From positions 62,001 through 126,000 of the IMG/VR virus record IMGVR_UViG_3300030673_000004: a DNA stretch of 64,000 bases. One strand, written 5' to 3'. Positions 30,188 to 49,725 of the stretch are shown in pieces. The notes under the pieces were generated by a model, which was given only the letters and a program-made list of their open reading frames with translations, was not told the origin of the DNA and searched no databases. The position numbers were made by a program, and so were the translations under genes. How positions within the stretch are numbered: the first letter of the stretch is position 1; each line of letters starts with the position of its first letter.

Positions 30188-30263
30188 GCCGCGCATTAGT
30201 CTAAATGGTAAAGACATTCCGGAATCATTCCGGAAAATGTTGGTTCGAATCCAGCACGTGGCA
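30188..30263 (+). ncRNA. Atypical tRNA-like RNA with TCA at the tip of a palindromic anticodon arm
   Basis: D-arm GTCT/AGAC, T-arm GTTGG-TTCGAAT-CCAGC, acceptor with a 2-nt bulge; anticodon arm TTCCGGAA-TCA-TTCCGGAA. Confidence 0.7.
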
Positions 30264-30264
30264 T

Positions 30265-30360
30265 GATGGGATAGCTCAATTGGTAGAGCGGCTCGCCCCC
30301 TTTAGGGATCGGGTGTGAAGGAGACTTCGTCGGTTGATGGTTCGAATCCATCGCTCATCT
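30265..30360 (+). ncRNA. Atypical tRNA-like RNA with expanded anticodon region and long variable arm
   Basis: GATGGGA..TAGCTCAATTGGTAGAGC; GCTCG[CCCCCTTTAGGGAT]CGGGT; variable arm GTGAAG-GAGA-CTTCGT; GATGG-TTCGAAT-CCATC. Confidence 0.7.
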
Positions 30361-30793: not shown

Positions 30794-30866
30794 GCCAGTG
30801 TAGCTCAGTTGGTAGAGCAGTTGCTTTGTAAGCATCAGGTCGCGAGTCCAAGTCTCGCCGCTGGCT
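30794..30866 (+). tRNA. tRNA-Thr(TGT)
   Basis: GCCAGTG/CGCTGGC; loop TTTGTAA. Confidence 0.92.
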
Positions 30867-30867
30867 C

Positions 30868-30996
30868 TTGTTCCTTGCTGTTAAGAATGAAGTTCATCTT
30901 ACCTAAAACAAGATATTTTGGATTCGAATCCAAAATACGCTTAACCGCGTATGGCTTTGGTGCCAATTTCTTCATTTTGCTTGTTTGCAGGAACAA
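30868..30996 (+). ncRNA. Y-RNA-like element 1 (degenerate tRNA-mimic domain)
   Basis: TTGTTCCT/AGGAACAA stem; TGCTGTT...TTGTTTGC signature; inner hairpins in T-AS-D order (TTTTGGA-TTCGAA-TCCAAAA, TACGC/GCGTA, GGC-TTTGGT-GCC). Confidence 0.7.
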
Positions 30997-31001
30997 ACTT
31001 T

Positions 31002-31074
31002 TCAGTCATGCTGTTCTGACATCAGGTTCATCCTTTTAAGATATTTTCCCGATGTTGATTTGTTTGCTGACTGA
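31002..31074 (+). ncRNA. Y-RNA-like element 2 (minimal, 73 nt)
   Basis: TCAGTCA/TGACTGA stem; TGCTGTT...TTGTTTGC; GGTTCATC motif; no tRNA domain. Confidence 0.7.
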
Positions 31075-31087
31075 TTTACTGTAGAAA

Positions 31088-31227
31088 GGTCAGTGCTGTT
31101 AGAGATCGGTTACTTCCAATTTCAAGGACGAGGTCACAGGTTCGAGTCCTGTTCCTGGCTTTTAATGCCGGGATAGCTCAGTTGGTTAGAGCGCGTAAAC
31201 TATCCGGTTTCGTTTGTTTGCCTGACT
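31088..31227 (+). ncRNA. Y-RNA-like element 3 (YrlA-type, full tRNA-mimic domain)
   Basis: GTCAG/CTGAC stem and signature; T-arm ACAGG-TTCGAGT-CCTGT precedes acceptor TCCTGGC-loop-GCCGGGA, then D-arm GCTC-AGTTGGTTA-GAGC. Confidence 0.85.
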
Positions 31228-31232
31228 GTTAA

Positions 31233-31305
31233 TGGCCCTTAGCTCATCTGGTAGAGCGCTACTCTGATATGGTAGAGGTGCTTGGTTCGAGTCCAAGAGG
31301 GCCAA
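31233..31305 (+). tRNA. tRNA-Ile(GAT)
   Basis: TGGCCCT/AGGGCCA; CTACT-CTGATAT-GGTAG. Confidence 0.92.
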
Positions 31306-31311
31306 TTCTTT

Positions 31312-31377
31312 ATACTTGCTGTTAGTCTTCAGATACATCTTTGGCTTGTAAAACCTGAAGACAGTTGTTTGCAGTAT
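31312..31377 (+). ncRNA. Y-RNA-like element 4 (minimal, 66 nt)
   Basis: ATACT/AGTAT stem; TGCTGTT...TTGTTTGC; GTCTTCAG/CTGAAGAC; GATACATC motif. Confidence 0.7.
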
Positions 31378-31385
31378 GAAGATAT

Positions 31386-31457
31386 GCACGAGTAGGTCAG
31401 TGGTAGACCACCTGCTTGCCAAGTAGGATGTCGTGGGTCCGAAACCCATCTCGTGCT
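31386..31457 (+). tRNA. tRNA-Gly(GCC)
   Basis: GCACGAG/CTCGTGC, U73; loop TTGCCAA. Confidence 0.92.
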
Positions 31458-31581
31458 TAGATGCGTAAATGAAATATGTCAACAAATGCTTCTATCATAT
31501 CTAGTAATCCGTGTATTCCATCTGGAGTTTATCCTGTGAAATCACCATCACCAGCCACACCTCCGAAGCATACATAAAAGT

Positions 31582-31706
31582 CCTATCTCAGTATAACCTT
31601 ACGAGCTAGCTGCCCTTGTTAGTGATAATAAGGAAGGTCAGGTCAAAGTCCTGGAGCGCCCCCGTTAGGCACAATAAGGAGCTTACGGTAACGGTACTGA
31701 GATAGG
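31582..31706 (+). ncRNA. Unassigned rod/multibranch RNA (125 nt)
   Basis: Perfect 12-bp helix CCTATCTCAGTA/TACTGAGATAGG enclosing further helices and CAGG-TCAAAGT-CCTG. Confidence 0.55.
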
Positions 31707-31710
31707 CAAT

Positions 31711-31782: not shown

Positions 31783-31966
31783 TTTGTTCATGGTGATGCT
31801 TGAGCAATAAATAGTATACTTTCATCACAGAGTATAATATAAATCTCCCGTGCATAAGAAGATGCGGAAATTCGGATAACGCAGCTTATGTGCTAACGGA
31901 CACTGGTGTTGATCGCACCCTGTTAGGGAGTTTTTGATCAGTACGTTTTCAGATCAAAACATTATT

Positions 31967-32089: not shown

Positions 32090-33478
32090 ATGCCTACCAT
32101 CGTTGAGAATGCTCACGGTGTTCGGGCTTACGAATTTGGAGATGAAGTGTCTCTTCGTAGGCTTGTTCTTGCGTCCTTGCTGACTGAAGATTCTTCAGAC
32201 ATGCAAAAGCAAATCGCTGACTTGGTGCCTCGTGTAAGTCCTACGTCTGTGATGAATCTGGCGATCACAGCTCGTAAGGATTATGCGCTACGCAAGGTTC
32301 CCTTGTTTTTGGTTCGTGAGATGTCTCGCTATGAAAACCATCGTCCCTATGTAGCAGATACTCTAGCTCAAGTTATTGAGCGTGCTGATGAGATGAGCAC
32401 TTTTCTATCCATGTATTGGGCAGGAAAGAATGTAGGCGAGGGGCGTGAGCCTCTTGCTAGGCAGGTTAAGCTTGGGTTGGGGCGTGCTTTTGGGAAGTTC
32501 AATGCTTTCTCTTTGGCTCGTTATGATCGTAATAGTGCTGCATTTTCCATGCAGGATGTTATTAGGATCGCGCATCCTCGACCTGAGTCTCCTGAGCAGG
32601 AAGTACTCTTTCGACAGATTGCTAAGGGTGAAGCTCTTCCTCCTGTAAAGGATTGGGAACACGAGCTATCTCAGTCAAAGGACAAGAAGGCTTCATGGGT
32701 TTCTCTTTTGGAGAACAAGCAGCTTGGTGGCCTTGCTCTGTTGAAGAACTTGCGTAACATGCTGCAAGCCGGTGTCTCTCAAAGTTTGATTGTCTCAACT
32801 ATTGCTCAGCATCCGTTCAAGTATGTTTTGCCCTTTCGGTTCATCTCTGCTCTTCGTGAGCTTGTGCTATCTGATGTAGTTGTCTCTAACGAACTGCGGG
32901 ATGCTTTAGAACAAGCAATGTTTCGCGGTTTGGTGGATTTTCCTAAGCTTGACGGAGATACCGTGTTCCTTGTTGATGTGTCTGGGTCTATGAGTCATCC
33001 TCTTGGGATGTCTTTCTCAGATCGGCACGGTAGGACTCATGCTAGCTCTATGACTCGATCTGATGGCGCTGCTGCTTTGACTATGATGCTGAATGAAATT
33101 TGTGATGTACCTCACATCTTTAAGTTTCATACGCGAATCATTCCAATTTCCGGGTCTCGCGGTTTTGCTCTAGGGTCTCAAGTTAACTATGCGCGGCAAA
33201 ACACACGTCTGGGTGACTGCTTAAAGCAGGCTCAGCATGAGATGTTGGTTAAGGGAATCACTCCTAAGCGTTTGATTGTTTTAACGGATGAGGAGTCTCA
33301 GGATCCTGTTGGGGAAGGATTCGCTCAGTATAACTACATGATCAACGTGAAGTCGGCTTCTTACAGTATTGCTTATAAGTCATGGATCCGCATGACTGGC
33401 TTTAGTGAGCATATTGTTAAGCTGCTTGTTGGGCATGAGCGGTTAGATAAGTATGTTAAGGAACATGTAGCATTGTGA
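32090..33478 (+). CDS. rsr: Ro60/Rsr TROVE-vWA RNA-binding protein
   Basis: LRRLVLASLL, LRKVPLFLVREM, VIERADEM, KFNAFSLARYDR, WEHELS, LALLKNLRNM, VLPFRFISA, VDVSGSM (MIDAS), LIVLTDEESQD; ATG with an AAGGGAG RBS. Confidence 0.93.
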   Translation: MPTIVENAHGVRAYEFGDEVSLRRLVLASLLTEDSSDMQKQIADLVPRVSPTSVMNLAITARKDYALRKVPLFLVREMSRYENHRPYVADTLAQVIERADEMSTFLSMYWAGKNVGEGREPLARQVKLGLGRAFGKFNAFSLARYDRNSAAFSMQDVIRIAHPRPESPEQEVLFRQIAKGEALPPVKDWEHELSQSKDKKASWVSLLENKQLGGLALLKNLRNMLQAGVSQSLIVSTIAQHPFKYVLPFRFISALRELVLSDVVVSNELRDALEQAMFRGLVDFPKLDGDTVFLVDVSGSMSHPLGMSFSDRHGRTHASSMTRSDGAAALTMMLNEICDVPHIFKFHTRIIPISGSRGFALGSQVNYARQNTRLGDCLKQAQHEMLVKGITPKRLIVLTDEESQDPVGEGFAQYNYMINVKSASYSIAYKSWIRMTGFSEHIVKLLVGHERLDKYVKEHVAL

Positions 33479-33606: not shown

Positions 33607-33750
33607 CTTGAATACATGCTGTTTGACTTCGGATACATCAACTAGATGGTCGCAGGTTCGAATCCTGTTAAGGCTTTGAAAGAAGCTTTATAGCTCAGTT
33701 GGTAGAGCACCAAGCTAAATTTCCGATTTCTTTTGTTTGCTGTATTTGAG
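33607..33750 (+). ncRNA. Y-RNA-like element 5 (YrlA-type, full tRNA-mimic domain)
   Basis: AATACA/TGTATT stem and signature; GCAGG-TTCGAAT-CCTGT, then TAAGGCTTT-GAAA-GAAGCTTTA, then GCTC-AGTTGGTA-GAGC. Confidence 0.85.
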
Positions 33751-33755
33751 TTTTT

Positions 33756-33819
33756 GGGGATGTCGTCTAGTGGTCTAGTTTTCATGGTGGCTACTTGAGT
33801 TCGAATCTCAGCCTCCCTA
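33756..33819 (+). pseudogene. tRNA-Glu(TTC)-like pseudogene with internal deletion
   Basis: GGGGATGTCGTCTAGTGGTCTAG joins directly to TTTTCATGGTGG; the D-stem 3' strand and anticodon-stem 5' strand are missing; T-arm intact. Confidence 0.7.
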
Positions 33820-33832
33820 TTACTTAGATCTG

Positions 33833-33861
33833 TTGACACAAATCTTTGACTGTTGTATATT
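33833..33861 (+). promoter_or_regulatory. sigma70 promoter
   Basis: TTGACA-17-TG.TATATT. Confidence 0.75.
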
Positions 33862-33872
33862 TGGTTGTGTTA

Positions 33873-34159: not shown

Positions 34160-34512
34160 GGGGGTGTATTGGTTTCGACAGATTCTGTGAGAATGATAGC
34201 GCGTGTCGAGGGTCCAGGTGGCCTCGTAAAAACCTGGAAAAAGTCAAACGGCGAAGAGATCTACTCTTACGCTCTGGCTGTCTGAGAAATCAGATACCAG
34301 AACCTTGCAATGAGATGCTGTTGTAGTTGCTTGGTATAATCTAGACGGCTGGGTTACAGTAATGTTTGTAGTCTGTAACTAAGAAAATCAAACTACGGTG
34401 TGTATGAGTCTGTTCTTCGACGCATGCGCAGTTAAGATCAAAAGAAGAACTACACACGTAGTGTTTTCATTTAAGTAGTTTTTGGACGCGGGTTCGAGTC
34501 CCGCCACCTCCA
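34160..34512 (+). ncRNA. ssrA: tmRNA; tag (A)GEEIYSYALAV at 34250-34285
   Basis: GGGGGTG TATTGGTTTCGAC 5' end; GACGCGGGTTCGAGTCCCGCCACCTCCA 3' end with G3-U; internal tag ORF ending ALAV-stop. Confidence 0.95.
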
Positions 34513-34545
34513 TTGTGTAAATGAGATCTATTTAAGGAGATCTCT

Positions 34546-34878
34546 ATGTCGGATGTAGTAAAAGATTTGTTACCTGATGAATATAACAGGGTACTTTCTT
34601 CAAATTCTGTGTCTGTAGTTGATTTTTGGGCTTCATGGTGTGGTCCGTGTACCGCGTTAGCTCCTGTCTACGAGGATATTGCCTCGGAGTATCAGACGAA
34701 AGCTAATTTTTACAAACTTGATGCTGGAGAACATACTGCTTTCGCAAAACAATTAGGGATACGAACGATTCCTACCTTGCAATTTCTGAGTAAAGGTACT
34801 ATTGTTCAAACCCTTACAGGTGCTACTACGAAAGACGCTATCATGGCTGCTCTTTTGCAGGCACTCTCTCTCATTTAA
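34546..34878 (+). CDS. trxA: Thioredoxin
   Basis: VDFWASWCGPC, IRTIPTL; AAGGAG RBS. Confidence 0.95.
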   Translation: MSDVVKDLLPDEYNRVLSSNSVSVVDFWASWCGPCTALAPVYEDIASEYQTKANFYKLDAGEHTAFAKQLGIRTIPTLQFLSKGTIVQTLTGATTKDAIMAALLQALSLI

Positions 34879-41083: not shown

Positions 41084-42331
41084 ATGCCTGATACAAAAGT
41101 TGCTTTGCATGTAGAAATTCCTGATGATATTCTGAAGTTGATCCAAGGTAAAGCAAACATATTGATTCATGGTCGTGCTGGTACAGGTAAGTCAACTATT
41201 TTGCGAGCAATAACTGCTAAATACCAAAATAGTGTTGTTTTGTCTCCTACGGGCATAGCAGCATTAAATGTGGGTGGTCAAACGATTCATTCATTTTTTG
41301 GTTTAGGCTTTGGTTTTCTGCAGCCTAAAGATGTGCGTTCTTGCTATCGTCAAAAATCCGTGCTGGAGAAGCATCCGATCATTATTATTGATGAAGTATC
41401 TATGGTACGCTCTGATGTCTTTACCGCGATAGACGTAGCCTTAAGGAAGACTCTTGGTGTTAAGCGTCCTTTTGGTGGCCTTCAGGTAATACTGCTTGGT
41501 GATACAGGTCAACTACCTCCTGTTGTTGTTTCAAACGAAAAAGCATTCTTTCCTGATGGAACATCTATGTTTTTTCGTTCTCAGTCTTTTGCCGATGCTC
41601 TTTTTGAGCATGTTGAACTAAACCATGTGTATAGGCAGACACATGCCGGGTTTATTGAGTTTTTGACCCGTATTAGGAATCTGTCTGTGACTCCTCGTGA
41701 CATGCACGATTTTAATGCACGTGTTTCTGTGTGTAATACAGAAGAGTCTTTAGGTGATCATATAATTCTATGTTTAACCAATAGAGCTGCCGAAGAGGTG
41801 AATGCTTCTAGATATCAAGAAATCCAATCTCCTGAGCATGTGTATCATGCAAACATCACAGGTTCTATAGCTGAAAGGGATTTTCCTACAGCCGAGTCCT
41901 TGAGATTGAAATGTGGCACTAAAGTGCTGATGCTTAGAAATGATAGTGATGGTCGTTGGGTTAATGGTACCATGGCTGTTGTTAGTAAGCTTTTGCCTCG
42001 TCAGATCTGGGTGACGATAAAAGGTAAGGAACATGAAGTTACTAAAGAAGTTTGGGAGAAGTTTAAGTACGACGTATCTGGTCAGGCTATACGTAAAACA
42101 GTAGCGGGGTCATTTGAACAATTTCCCTTGAAGCTTGCTTGGGCAATTACGGTACATAAGTCGCAAGGTATGACTTTAAGTCGTTTTCATTTGGATTTAA
42201 GTACTCCTCCTTTTGAGCACGGGCAACTTTACGTGGCCCTATCGCGTGCTGAGGGTCTTGATAGTATCTCATTGTCCCGTGCTCTTGAGATGACTGATGT
42301 AAAAGTTGATCGTGACTTGCTTTTAACCTAA
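41084..42331 (+). CDS. PIF1/RecD-like SF1B helicase
   Basis: GRAGTGKS, SPTGIAA, GQTIHSFF, IIDEVSM, GDTGQLPPV, YRQ, LRNDS..WVNG, QFPLKLAWAITVHKSQG, GQLYVALSR. Confidence 0.95.
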   Translation: MPDTKVALHVEIPDDILKLIQGKANILIHGRAGTGKSTILRAITAKYQNSVVLSPTGIAALNVGGQTIHSFFGLGFGFLQPKDVRSCYRQKSVLEKHPIIIIDEVSMVRSDVFTAIDVALRKTLGVKRPFGGLQVILLGDTGQLPPVVVSNEKAFFPDGTSMFFRSQSFADALFEHVELNHVYRQTHAGFIEFLTRIRNLSVTPRDMHDFNARVSVCNTEESLGDHIILCLTNRAAEEVNASRYQEIQSPEHVYHANITGSIAERDFPTAESLRLKCGTKVLMLRNDSDGRWVNGTMAVVSKLLPRQIWVTIKGKEHEVTKEVWEKFKYDVSGQAIRKTVAGSFEQFPLKLAWAITVHKSQGMTLSRFHLDLSTPPFEHGQLYVALSRAEGLDSISLSRALEMTDVKVDRDLLLT

Positions 42332-47449: not shown

Positions 47450-47887
47450 ATGTCAGATGAGTCCCTTACAAAAGTTCAGCATCGTGTATCTTCTATCCTG
47501 CATGTGCAGGTGGGTGAATCAGGTGTCTGGGAGCCTACTACAGATCAGCTTGATGCTCTAGTCAGTCAGTTTGTTTCGGCAGTAAACACAAATGTAGCTC
47601 TTGCAGTAGTAGCTACTCGTAAGGGCGTGACTGCTCAGTGTATCCATATTCCAGATACCGATGCTGCTATACTGCATGTTGAGGCAGGCGCACCTGGATG
47701 GGAGCCGTTACCATCCGAGCTTAAAGATCTAACAGATTTGTTTGAGAAAGCAGCTACTTCTGACGGTAGTATTGCTGTAGTAGCTACTCGTACCGGTGTG
47801 ACTGCTCATGTTGTGGATTTATCCAATCCTGATTCTGAGGCATTTCCTGAGTTTCTATATGACACTGATTGCGAGGATGCGTCATGA
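47450..47887 (+). CDS. Protein with two tandem ~60-aa repeats
   Basis: ILHV..G..G.WEP....L..L...F..A.....AVVATR.GVTA occurs twice. Confidence 0.8.
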   Translation: MSDESLTKVQHRVSSILHVQVGESGVWEPTTDQLDALVSQFVSAVNTNVALAVVATRKGVTAQCIHIPDTDAAILHVEAGAPGWEPLPSELKDLTDLFEKAATSDGSIAVVATRTGVTAHVVDLSNPDSEAFPEFLYDTDCEDAS

Positions 47888-48561
47888 ATCTCTATGAACA
47901 TGCTGTGAGCGAATTTGAGTTGCTTGAGCAGAATTTGGACAGTGATCCAGATAAGCATCCTATCATTTTAGAATTCAAAGCTGAAATTCTTTCTCTAGTT
48001 AAGCGTTTTGCGGACTCTGGTCCATCTGGTGGTTCTGCTCCCTTTTATGCGTCTGCCGTATCTCGGGCTATTAAAGATCTCTTTATGTTTGATCCTATTG
48101 GTCCCCTCACAGGAGATGATAGTGAGTGGGTAGATACATCTGAAATTAGTGGCCTGTCTGAAGGAACGCTATGGCAGAATAAGCGGCTATCTTCTGTGTT
48201 TAAGGATGGTAATGATCCGGCTCATTACTTGGATGCTGTTGTATTCCAAGGTGAGTCTGATTATGATCGTTTCAGTGGTCATGTTGATAATGTTTCCAGT
48301 GTTTGGTGTATTAAGAGTTTTCCTTTTAGACCCAAAACATTCACAATAGACGTGTATCGTGTTCCTAGTGAGACAGATCCAGATCGTGTCAGTTGCCGTG
48401 AAGGTGATTATTTATACCACATTAAAGATCCTTCACAGTTAGAGGCTGTTCGCGACTACTATGATGAGAAGATATCTCGGATATCTTCAATAGACTCAAC
48501 ATCGGCTGTAGGCGCGCAAGTTGATGCTGTTTGCTGCCCAAAGACAGTAAAGTTGGACTAA
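47884..48561 (+). CDS. Hypothetical protein
   Basis: GAGG RBS; GPSGGSA, PIGPLTGDDSEW, WQNKRLSSVFK. Confidence 0.75.
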   Translation: MNLYEHAVSEFELLEQNLDSDPDKHPIILEFKAEILSLVKRFADSGPSGGSAPFYASAVSRAIKDLFMFDPIGPLTGDDSEWVDTSEISGLSEGTLWQNKRLSSVFKDGNDPAHYLDAVVFQGESDYDRFSGHVDNVSSVWCIKSFPFRPKTFTIDVYRVPSETDPDRVSCREGDYLYHIKDPSQLEAVRDYYDEKISRISSIDSTSAVGAQVDAVCCPKTVKLD

Positions 48562-48704: not shown

Positions 48705-48793
48705 CTCAATATACTGTTAGTTTTCGGATACATCTTCGCCATACATGAAGACCTCCTGAAAGGGTAATCCGATTACGTAAGTTTGTTATTGAG
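48705..48793 (+). ncRNA. Y-RNA-like element 6 (divergent, remote)
   Basis: CTCAATA/TATTGAG stem; TACTGTT..TTTCGGATACATC...TCCGAT..TTTGTT matches elements 4 and 5. Confidence 0.55.
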
Positions 48794-48894: not shown

Positions 48895-49725
48895 ATGGCT
48901 AAATGTTTGAATTGTGGTACTGATTTGCTTGGAAAATATCAAAGAAAATTTTGTTCTCACTCATGTTCTGCTACGTATAACCAAACAGGTCGTTCTAGCA
49001 ACAATAAAAATACACGAGTTAACAAGATTTGTTTTCAGAAAGCGCATATAGCACAATGTTCTATATGCGGAAAGACAATTAAACGCGAATCAACATGTTG
49101 TGCCCCTTGTGCTAAGCGTCAGCGTAGATGTAATTCATATATCTCACATGGTCCCTATGCTGGGTGTTTAACATCCTTGCCATACATTGCGTCGATACAT
49201 GGACGACGTATTGTTCGGTATACTGATGCTTTAGGTAAGAAAAGAAGTACATCTTTAGCGCGCTATCTAATGTCACTTTACCTTGGTTATATACCAACTA
49301 ATGCGTGGGATGTAGATCATATAGATCAAGATCCTACAAATGATCGTATATCTAATCTACAGTTGATATCAAAACAAGCTAATCTGTCTAAGGGTGGTAA
49401 ACATAATTCACGGCATGTTATTCATGCAACGTGCGCTGTATGTGGCGCTGTTGTTCAAAAACCGGGTCTTATTGCTTATTATCCGAGGGATACTATTTTT
49501 ACTTGTTCTCGTATGTGTGCTGGTCATATCTCACACATGCGAAAAACTATGTCTCTTTCAGAGCTTCATTTACGTAATGCTGCTTTTGATGTTGATGTGC
49601 CTAGACAAAGTGTTCCTATCATTGAATATAAGCGTATTGAGAGATTATCACCAGATTTAGAATTCGTATTGAATATCCTGCTTGCTTATGGGCAGGACTA
49701 CTATCCTAGTAAATGTTCTGCTTGA
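48895..49725 (+). CDS. HNH (homing-type) endonuclease with Zn fingers
   Basis: CLNCG..KFCSHSC; SLARYLM; WDVDHIDQDPTNDRISNLQLIS; CAVCG..FTCSRMC. Confidence 0.88.
   Translation: MAKCLNCGTDLLGKYQRKFCSHSCSATYNQTGRSSNNKNTRVNKICFQKAHIAQCSICGKTIKRESTCCAPCAKRQRRCNSYISHGPYAGCLTSLPYIASIHGRRIVRYTDALGKKRSTSLARYLMSLYLGYIPTNAWDVDHIDQDPTNDRISNLQLISKQANLSKGGKHNSRHVIHATCAVCGAVVQKPGLIAYYPRDTIFTCSRMCAGHISHMRKTMSLSELHLRNAAFDVDVPRQSVPIIEYKRIERLSPDLEFVLNILLAYGQDYYPSKCSA

What the first reader, a model, noticed from the sequence alone, without database searches (positions are those of the whole stretch)
31002..31377. Minimal 66-73 nt Y-like RNAs that keep only the conserved stem
Seen: elements 2 and 4 retain the signature stem but replace the whole tRNA-mimic domain with a loop of about 20 nt; element 1 keeps a shrunken T-AS-D domain. 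This forms a size series of 66, 73, 129, 140 and 144 nt. Inference: a natural deletion series separating the Ro-binding module from the effector module; short forms could be gatekeepers or competitive inhibitors of the host Ro.
Basis: partly seen in the sequence, partly recalled or inferred. Interest (0 to 1): 0.7.

Follow-up and report, generated by a model that had tools for sequence, protein, structure and literature searches.

The report
Short Y-like RNAs beside phage Ro
A 375-kb peat jumbo phage carries six related hairpin RNAs in its tRNA gene array next to a Ro60-type gene, and the two shortest (72 and 75 nt, no tRNA-like domain) are conserved, structure-preserving genes in related phages, so they look like a short class of phage Y RNA and not like decaying copies.

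Summary
The window (62001-126000 of a 375.5-kb IMG/VR jumbo phage) holds 34 tRNA genes, a tmRNA and a TROVE/Ro60 gene (32090-33478). Six + strand elements share one stem module:
- E1 30868-30996, E2 31001-31075, E3 31088-31228, E4 31309-31380, E5 33609-33748.

E3 and E5 carry YrlA-type T, acceptor-like and D arms. They match Rfam YrlA only below threshold. E1 has a degenerate version. E2, E4 and E6 have none.

A covariance model finds exactly these six in the whole genome. It also finds 21 more beside Ro genes that are 61-90% identical. In the joint alignment 95.8% of cells pair, and all 18 pairs show compensatory changes.

Elements of 80 nt or less occur in every related lineage sampled. Their apical loops are partly invariant: E2 19/23 columns, E4 11/26. 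An E4-like loop recurs beside Ro genes only 35-41% identical. So "decaying duplicates" is rejected, and "keeps only the stem" is incomplete.

Hairpin-type Y RNAs without a tRNA-like domain are already known (YrlB, Yrn2, Thermus phage Yrl2). This is therefore a new variant of a known kind. Ro binding and expression remain untested.

The parts
30794..30867 (+). tRNA-Thr(tgt). Its 3' end abuts E1.
   Evidence: ARAGORN and Rfam.
30868..30996 (+). E1, a 129-nt Y-like element. It has the shared stem module, a first hairpin, a good T arm (UUCGAAU loop), a 5-bp hairpin and a degenerate D-like hairpin.
   Evidence: R2 52.5 bits although not in the training set. Fold z -4.33. No Rfam YrlA hit. Orthologue at L004:250-382.
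31001..31075 (+). E2, a short 75-nt Y-like hairpin. It has the stem module and a 23-nt apical region (GUUCAUCCUUUUAAGAU...).
   Evidence: R1 30.8 bits and R2 64 bits. Orthologues at L004:384-462 and in L011/L012 (Ro 61% identical), with compensatory changes in both helices and 19/23 apical columns invariant.
31088..31228 (+). E3, a 141-nt YrlA-like element. It has the stem module plus a T arm, an acceptor-like hairpin and a D arm.
   Evidence: Rfam YrlA 34.8 bits over model positions 23-87, gathering score 69. R2 50.1 bits. Orthologues in L004, L006, L007, L008 and L009.
31233..31305 (+). tRNA-Ile(gat), lying between E3 and E4.
31309..31380 (+). E4, a short 72-nt Y-like hairpin. It has the stem module and a 22-nt apical region containing CAUCUUUGGCUUG.
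   Evidence: R2 72.9 bits. Orthologues at L004:688-766, L006:89-164, L007:391-467 and L008:1808-1881. Similar loops in L022 and in Xanthomonas phage MET23-P3. A natural variant, C>T at 31327, keeps the pair as G.U.
31386..31457 (+). tRNA-Gly(gcc), starting 5 nt after the last paired base of E4.
32090..33478 (+). Ro60/Rsr-type gene (TROVE domain, 462 aa), the presumed protein partner.
   Evidence: Pfam TROVE E 1e-11. More than 2,400 homologues. The nearest solved structure is Thermus phage phiLo Ro60, 9KOP/9L5Y, E 2.4e-19.
33609..33748 (+). E5, a 140-nt YrlA-like element downstream of Ro and tRNA-Lys.
   Evidence: Rfam YrlA 37.7 bits over model positions 1-114. R2 55.1 bits. R2 found no element downstream of Ro in L004, L005, L011 or L012.
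48706..48792 (+). E6, a sixth, 87-nt Y-like element without a tRNA-like domain. It lies between tRNA-Met and tRNA-Val, 15 kb from Ro.
   Evidence: R1 35.1 bits and R2 53.1 bits. The clamp is A-U/U-G instead of G-C.

Best explanation
The six elements are a paralogous family of phage-encoded Y RNA-like noncoding RNAs. Their likely partner is the phage's own Ro60 protein.

Shown:
- All six share a covariation-supported stem module, and this module is the only feature common to all of them.
- E3 and E5 cap it with a YrlA-type tRNA-like domain. E1 has a degenerate version.
- E2, E4 and E6 cap it with short apical domains.

Inferred:
- Ro binding site. The module's geometry is a helix, a 5-nt/8-nt internal loop, then a 7-8-bp helix. 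This matches the Rfam YrlA consensus, so the outer helix with its bulged U, clamp and U/G-rich loop is the likely Ro-binding site.
- Biogenesis. The elements sit within a few nt of the flanking tRNA genes and no promoter or terminator signal stands out at them. They are probably transcribed with the tRNA array and released when RNase P and the tRNA 3'-end processing enzymes cut out the neighbouring tRNAs.
- Function of the short forms. They are old, conserved genes. Like the hairpin-type second Y RNAs of bacteria, they probably occupy Ro as a gate, or present a different conserved pyrimidine-rich loop to another partner. This would give the phage several Ro particles with different specificity.
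For: Family and structure:
- R1 was trained on E4 only and cross-detects E2, E5 and E6.
- R2 finds six hits of 50 bits or more and nothing else in 375 kb.
- Across 27 elements from 8 lineages, 95.8% of cells pair, 18/18 pairs show compensatory changes, and the covariation score is 0.856 against 0.215 shuffled and 0.10-0.13 slid.

Link to YrlA and Ro:
- Sub-threshold YrlA hits on E3 and E5.
- All elements are on the Ro strand, and five lie within 1.3 kb of Ro.
- In whole-genome scans of Caulobacter phage CcrColossus and Xanthomonas phage MET23-P3, R2 hits occur only just upstream of Ro.
- Both the R2 model and the Rfam YrlA consensus have the 5/8 loop geometry.

Retention of short forms:
- Elements of 80 nt or less occur in L004, L006, L007, L008, L009/L010, L011/L012 and L022.
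- Conserved loops.

Precedent:
- Thermus phage phiLo Ro60 binds a one-hairpin Yrl2 and forms a complex with host PNPase (PMC12135203).
Against: - There is no evidence of transcription, processing or Ro binding. No RNA run was listed and the complex job was not folded.
- The published motifs GNCGAAN0-1G, GGUCCGA and CGAA are absent from the stems.
- The Rfam YrlA scores are about half the gathering score, and cmscan aligns the YrlA basal helix to the inner helix, not the outer one. Which part binds Ro is therefore unresolved.
- E6 lies 15 kb from Ro.
- Single-sequence fold z-scores are modest, -1.3 to -4.3.
- The alignments used for pair counts were fitted to the model.
Confidence: 0.65

Rival explanations
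1. The short copies are decaying duplicates, that is, pseudogenes of long YrlA-like genes without function.
For: E2 looks like E1 with an internal deletion. E6 has a weakened clamp and the poorest fold z-score, -1.26. L012:120-198 is a degenerate copy at 33 bits.
Against: - E2 and E4 orthologues persist in lineages whose Ro is only 61-66% identical. Both helices are kept through compensatory changes and parts of the loops are invariant.
- An E4-like loop is seen at 35-41% Ro identity.
- The element that R2 does not find downstream of Ro in any relative covering that stretch is a long one, E5.
Confidence: 0.04
2. The hairpins are processing or stabilising signals of the polycistronic tRNA precursor, for example entry or stop sites for RNases. 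They are unrelated to Ro, and the long forms are tRNA-derived inserts.
For: All six lie inside the tRNA array, a few nt from tRNA ends. E6, and the copy in Ralstonia phage RsoM2USA, lie 15-30 kb from Ro but between tRNA genes.
Against: - Only a few of the roughly 33 tRNA spacers carry one.
- In CcrColossus and MET23-P3 the same module sits in tandem directly upstream of Ro. MET23-P3 has no tRNA gene in that stretch (Rfam found none), and CcrColossus has one annotated tRNA-Gln there, which overlaps a YrlA-like hit.
- The conserved internal loop and apical loops are more than a processing hairpin needs.
Confidence: 0.12
3. One reading: the short forms are decoys that bind and block the host's Ro60, acting as competitive inhibitors and not as partners of the phage Ro.
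For: The gate function of Y RNAs is a published model (bioRxiv 10.1101/312249). Stem-only RNAs could fill a Ro ring without recruiting an effector.
Against: - The host is unknown, and so is whether it has a Ro.
- The stem motif varies with the phage Ro clade: UGCUGUUAG here, UGGUGUU in L022, UGGUGWAG in Xanthomonas phages and UGGCGUAG in CcrColossus. This fits co-evolution with the phage protein.
- The conserved loops argue for more than passive blocking.
Confidence: 0.12
4. The elements are a mobile repeat, such as a miniature inverted-repeat element or homing site, that spread within the tRNA array.
For: They are multi-copy with terminal inverted complementarity. HNH endonuclease genes lie in the array.
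Against: - All copies are on one strand.
- The helices differ in sequence between copies but keep pairing.
- Positions are orthologous between relatives.
- There are no copies elsewhere in the genome.
Confidence: 0.03

Closest known systems
YrlA (Rfam RF02553; Chen et al. [quoted passage not shown]
   Same: - Encoded next to a Ro60 gene on the same strand.
- A terminal stem, then a 5-nt/8-nt internal loop, then a 7-8-bp helix.
- E3 and E5 have T arm, acceptor-like hairpin and D arm in the YrlA order.
   Different: - Scores reach only 35-38 bits against a gathering score of 69.
- The GNCGAAN0-1G motif is absent and UGCUGUUAG stands near the 5' end instead.
- There is an extra small hairpin after the inner helix.
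- There are six paralogues, and they are embedded in a tRNA array.
- E2, E4 and E6 have no tRNA-like domain and no Rfam hit.
Hairpin-type second Y RNAs of bacteria: S. Typhimurium YrlB, M. smegmatis YrlB, D. radiodurans Yrn2 (PMC4201824)
   Same: - They coexist with a tRNA-like Y RNA at the Ro locus.
[quoted passage not shown]
- In M. smegmatis they are processed from one precursor with YrlA.
   Different: - Those RNAs were shown to bind Ro; these were not tested.
- YrlB has no known homologues outside Salmonella, whereas E2 and E4 have orthologues in several phage lineages.
- At 72-75 nt they are shorter than the 80-130 nt given for characterised Y RNAs in 2014.
Thermus phage phiLo Ro60 with Yrl1 and Yrl2 (PMC12135203; PDB 9KOP, 9L5Y)
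   Same: - Phage-encoded Ro60, which is the nearest solved structure to this one.
- Phage-encoded hairpin Y-like RNAs lie upstream of it.
- Yrl2 is a single hairpin that binds Ro 1:1, and the Ro-RNA pair forms a complex with host PNPase.
   Different: - The phiLo RNAs were picked by a CGAA motif in a large bulge, which is absent here.
- phiLo has two RNAs and no tRNA-array setting is described for them; here there are six.
- No tRNA-like forms are described there.
Unannotated Y-like arrays in cultured phages: Caulobacter phage CcrColossus (NC_019406), Xanthomonas phage MET23-P3 (OK913680), Ralstonia phage RsoM2USA (MG752970)
   Same: - The same stem module is detected by R2.
- Copies with and without a T arm occur side by side. 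Examples are CcrColossus L027:1123-1207 and 1213-1313, MET23-P3 L026:1885-1948 (64 nt), and an 86-nt copy between tRNA genes in RsoM2USA.
   Different: - The clamp is GG/CC, and the motif is UGGCGUAG or UGGUGWAG.
- Their Ro is only 34-37% identical.
- In two of them the copies sit in tandem directly upstream of Ro, not spread between tRNA genes.

Membership tests
YrlA (Rfam RF02553) | Score at or above the curated gathering score of 69 bits | tested here: not met
   E5 scores 37.7 bits and E3 34.8 bits. E1, E2 and E4 have no match at E up to 10 in targeted scans, and E6 has none at E up to 1 in the whole-genome scan.
YrlA (Rfam RF02553) | tRNA-like domain: T arm, acceptor-like hairpin and D arm, in that order | tested here: met
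   Met for E3 and E5 (alignments). Partly met for E1, which has a T arm but a degenerate D arm. Absent from E2, E4 and E6, so these three are not YrlA.
YrlA (Chen et al. 2014 criteria) | GNCGAAN0-1G motif near the 5' end | tested here: not met
   A regex search finds none in any of the six. UGCUGUUAG occupies a similar position. Phage relatives carry intermediate forms (UGGUGAAG, UGGCGUAG). Homology of the motifs is an inference.
YrlA (Chen et al. 2014 criteria) | Within about 4 kb of the Ro60 gene and on the same strand | tested here: met
   E1-E5 lie within 1.3 kb of the gene at 32090-33478, on the + strand. E6 is on the same strand but 15 kb away.
Y RNA (functional class) | Long stem formed by pairing of the 5' and 3' ends | tested here: met
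   18 pairs, 95.8% of cells paired, all pairs with compensatory changes, and both controls far lower.
Y RNA (functional class) | Bound by Ro60, with accumulation that depends on Ro60 | not testable with these tools
   The complex-prediction job with RNA was not folded. No RNA-seq run was listed.
Hairpin-type Y RNA (YrlB / Yrn2 / phiLo Yrl2) | [quoted passage not shown] | tested here: met
   E2 and E4 folds. The apical regions CCUUUUAA and UCUUUGGCU are pyrimidine-rich. This class has no sequence definition, so the match is one of shape only.
phiLo Yrl1/Yrl2 | CGAA motif in a large internal bulge | tested here: not met
   Reading the printed E2 and E4 sequences shows no CGAA anywhere in them; this is a check by eye, and searched only for the longer GNCGAAN0-1G, which contains CGAA.

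The most novel reading that the evidence does not exclude
The short forms are not stripped-down leftovers. They are an old, separate class of phage Y RNA whose conserved loop (about CWUCUUUGGYUUGAAAA in the E4 type) is its own effector module. In this reading one phage Ro ring is programmed by several RNAs released from a tRNA precursor, some aimed at tRNA-handling factors and others at a different partner. The stem module shared by all six would then mark the minimal Ro-binding unit of this clade.
Probability: 0.4. Interest if true: 0.62.

Novelty: new variant of a known kind. Interest (0 to 1): 0.5.

Why it matters
Y RNAs are modular: a Ro-binding stem plus an effector module. However, the partner of the bacterial tRNA-like module is unknown, and the hairpin-type second Y RNAs have never had a family definition.

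This phage clade offers paralogues with the full, partial or no tRNA-like domain on one shared stem, with orthologues that show which parts are constrained. That gives three things:
- a ready-made set of natural constructs for mapping what Ro needs and what the apical modules recruit;
- covariance models that find such RNAs where Rfam finds nothing;
- cultured phages (CcrColossus, MET23-P3, RsoM2USA) that carry the same module and could be tested.

It also suggests that jumbo phages deliver Ro particles together with tRNAs and tmRNA as one RNA-maintenance package.

Tried and rejected
- Complex prediction: complex prediction with Ro and E4 RNA was not folded by the tool. It is no evidence either way.
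- Expression: no RNA run was listed for the region.
- DNA runs: laying four DNA runs gave mostly tRNA cross-matches from other organisms. It also gave a few near-identical contigs from wastewater and freshwater, with one structure-preserving variant.
- Close relatives in IMG/VR: none found, by Ro peptide patterns or by the E2 and E4 loop patterns.
- JGI metagenome scan: it returned only one 375.8-kb contig, judged from its size to be the same phage.
- Phage collection: blastn matched tRNAs only.
- Antisense targets of the E2 and E4 loops in the phage genome: the longest complements are 11 nt, which I estimate is about what chance gives in this genome.
- Promoter and terminator scan: promoter-like sites are no more frequent than in shuffles, terminator-like sites are nominally more frequent (9 against 4.8), and neither marks the elements.
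- My first loose motif-and-stem scanner gave about 90 genome hits against 3-19 in shuffles. I dropped it in favour of covariance models.
- Register of the published Ro-binding motif: three alignments are possible (lower motif, top of inner helix, or geometry-based). None could be settled.

Full report
SETTING

The window is positions 62001-126000 of a 375,537-bp IMG/VR virus record with direct terminal repeats. Near-identical DNA is held in peat metagenomes, with fragments in wastewater and freshwater runs. Between about 29.5 and 55.8 kb the + strand carries 34 tRNA genes and a tmRNA at 34160-34515. Inside this array lies a 462-aa TROVE-domain protein at 32090-33478. It has thousands of Ro60-type homologues. 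Its nearest solved structure is the Ro60 of Thermus phage phiLo (9KOP/9L5Y, E 2.4e-19).

THE OBSERVATION

- E1 30868-30996 (129 nt)
- E2 31001-31075 (75 nt)
- E3 31088-31228 (141 nt)
- E4 31309-31380 (72 nt)
- E5 33609-33748 (140 nt)

All share the same module, in this order: an outer helix, one bulged U, a two-base-pair G-C clamp, an internal loop (5' UGUUA, 3' NNNUGUUU), an inner helix of about eight pairs closed by G-C, then RUWCWUC.

The apical parts differ:
- E3 and E5 continue into a T arm, an acceptor-like hairpin and a D arm. They match Rfam YrlA at 34.8 and 37.7 bits, against a gathering score of 69.
- E1 has a good T arm but a degenerate D-like arm and no YrlA match.
- E2 and E4 have only 23 and 22 nt between the strands of the inner helix.

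IS IT MORE THAN CHANCE?

A covariance model built from E4 and two orthologues only (R1) detected E2, E5, several relatives and a sixth copy.

A second model (R2) finds exactly six matches of 50-73 bits in the whole genome. All are on the + strand inside the tRNA array, and the next hit scores 14.6 bits. E1 and its orthologue were not in R2's training set and still score 52.5 and 55.7 bits.

RELATIVES

Seven Ro proteins 61-90% identical to this one were found and their contigs fetched (L004-L013). The gene order tRNA-Thr / elements / tRNA-Ile / element / tRNA-Gly / tRNA-Gly / tRNA-Tyr / Ro is conserved. R2 finds 21 further elements there.

On the joint alignment of 27 elements:
- 95.8% of cells form standard pairs.
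- All 18 pairs show changes on both sides.
- The covariation score is 0.856, against 0.215 for shuffles and 0.10-0.13 when the 3' partners are slid.
- Even the two-pair clamp covaries (C-G to A-U in four copies).

The alignment was fitted to the model, which favours the structure, but the margins are large.

Retention of short forms:
- E4 orthologues occur in L004, L006, L007 and L008.
- E2 orthologues occur in L004 and in L011/L012, where Ro is 61% identical.
- Other forms of 80 nt or less occur in L007, L009/L010 and L012.
- By contrast, R2 finds no element downstream of Ro, where the long E5 sits, in L004, L005, L011 or L012.

THE LOOPS ARE NOT INERT

Among E2 orthologues, 19 of 23 apical columns are invariant against 20 of 36 paired columns. 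Among E4 orthologues, CAUCUUUGGCUUG is kept in four of the five lineages (L004 carries a 3-nt insertion inside it) while the helices change by compensation. An E4-like apical sequence recurs in a 71-nt element beside a Ro only 41% identical (L022:3317-3387). It also recurs in a 64-nt element of Xanthomonas phage MET23-P3, where Ro is 35% identical. So the short forms keep more than the stem.

A NATURAL SERIES OF ARM LOSS

E2 shares GUUCAUC, a three-pair AUC/GAU stub and AAGAUAUUUU with E1, and lacks what lies between. At the position of E1, L008 and L009 have 95-nt elements that keep the first hairpin and a small UUCG hairpin but no T or D arm. L007 has a full E1-type copy. With E6 and the 95-99-nt forms, sizes run 72, 75, 87, 95-99, 129, 140, 141. 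Because E2 and E4 have orthologues across the clade, these losses are old.

LINK TO Ro, NOT TO tRNA GENES

In whole-genome scans of Caulobacter phage CcrColossus (280 kb) and MET23-P3 (43 kb), R2 hits lie only in the tandem array of Y-like elements directly upstream of Ro. Those arrays mix YrlA-like copies with copies that lack a T arm. Ralstonia phage RsoM2USA has the nearest Ro among cultured phages (37% identity). It has an 86-nt copy between tRNA-Met and tRNA-Gly, 30 kb from its Ro, which resembles the position of E6.

The 5' motif changes with the Ro clade:
- UGCUGUUAG in this clade
- UGGUGUU in L022
- UGGUGWAG in Xanthomonas phages
- UGGCGUAG in CcrColossus

This fits co-evolution with the protein. 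It also suggests, without proving, descent from the published GNCGAAN0-1G motif, which is literally absent here.

The 5-nt/8-nt internal loop followed by a 7-8-pair helix is the same geometry as the Rfam YrlA consensus. However, cmscan itself aligns the YrlA basal helix to the inner helix. Which part contacts Ro is therefore unresolved.

LIKELY MECHANISM

Shown: a conserved, structured, paralogous RNA family beside Ro, with and without a tRNA-like cap.

Inferred:
- The shared stem module binds the phage Ro.
- The elements lie a few nt from the neighbouring tRNA genes and no promoter or terminator signal marks them. They are probably cut out of the tRNA precursor by the tRNA end-processing enzymes.
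- The apical modules give the Ro particle different partners, or the short forms act as gates.

Published work supplies the frame:
- Y RNAs are modular tethers and possible gates (bioRxiv 10.1101/312249).
- Phage phiLo Ro60 binds a one-hairpin Yrl2 and forms a complex with host PNPase (PMC12135203).

RIVALS

- Decay of duplicates is contradicted by conservation.
- A pure tRNA-processing signal is possible, but it fits poorly with the Ro-adjacent tandem arrays in phages that have few or no tRNA genes at that locus.
- Inhibition of a host Ro cannot be tested and is less simple than binding the phage's own Ro.
- A mobile repeat is contradicted by strand bias, positional orthology and covariation.

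NOVELTY

Y RNAs without a tRNA-like domain are known, and so are phage Ro-RNA pairs. The following are new here:
- a six-member family interleaved with tRNA genes in a jumbo phage;
- a divergent stem motif that neither Rfam nor the published motifs capture;
- two short orthologous groups with conserved loops, shorter than the 80-130 nt quoted for characterised Y RNAs (PMC4201824);
- a natural series of arm loss.

No paper in the held library describes this. I rate it a new variant of a known kind, of moderate interest. Expression and Ro binding remain to be shown.

Noticed in passing
window 48706-48792 (+): A sixth Y-like element (E6, 87 nt, no tRNA-like domain) lies between tRNA-Met and tRNA-Val, 15 kb from Ro.
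   Followed up: yes
window about 31845-31960 (+), between tRNA-Gly(tcc) and tRNA-Tyr: Another conserved structured noncoding stretch lies just upstream of the Ro gene. blastn finds homologues in L004, L006, L007, L009/L010 and L011/L012, and the positionally matching L008 stretch aligns with them. RNAalifold gives 26 pairs, 16 with compensatory changes. R2 and Rfam do not match it. Its function is unknown; it could be a further Ro-related RNA.
   Followed up: partly
window 31458-31710 (+): A 250-nt insert lies between the two tRNA-Gly genes. It has a long terminal stem at about 31581-31707 and a fold z-score of -3.06. It is absent from L004, where the two tRNAs are 11 nt apart.
   Followed up: partly
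window 30191-30360 (+): A weak tRNA-like match at 30191-30263 (27 bits) is followed by a tRNA at 30265-30360 with a 36-nt insertion in the anticodon region. ARAGORN cannot assign an anticodon.
   Followed up: no
window 47869-48558 (+): An ORF matches Pfam Tad3, the Thoeris inhibitor (E 6e-24). It lies inside the tRNA array just upstream of tRNA-Met and E6. Nearby are a PIF1-like helicase (41084-42328), an HNH endonuclease (48895-49722) and a thioredoxin (34546-34875).
   Followed up: no
window E1-E6, motif after the inner helix: Within this genome E4, E5 and E6 all read AUACAUC. E1 and E2 read GUUCAUC, and E4 orthologues in L006, L007 and L008 read GUUCAUC or UUUCAUC. This may reflect homogenisation between paralogues.
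   Followed up: no
L027 (Caulobacter phage CcrColossus NC_019406, record 107.0-109.7 kb): About eight or nine tandem Y-like elements lie upstream of the annotated RNA-binding (TROVE) protein. None is annotated as such. An annotated tRNA-Gln (locus 1535-1602) overlaps one YrlA-like hit.
   Followed up: partly
window 33752-33872 (+): The spacer after E5 aligns at 76% identity to the stretch of L004 that holds tRNA-Glu(ctc), but no tRNA is called here. It may be a decayed tRNA gene.
   Followed up: no
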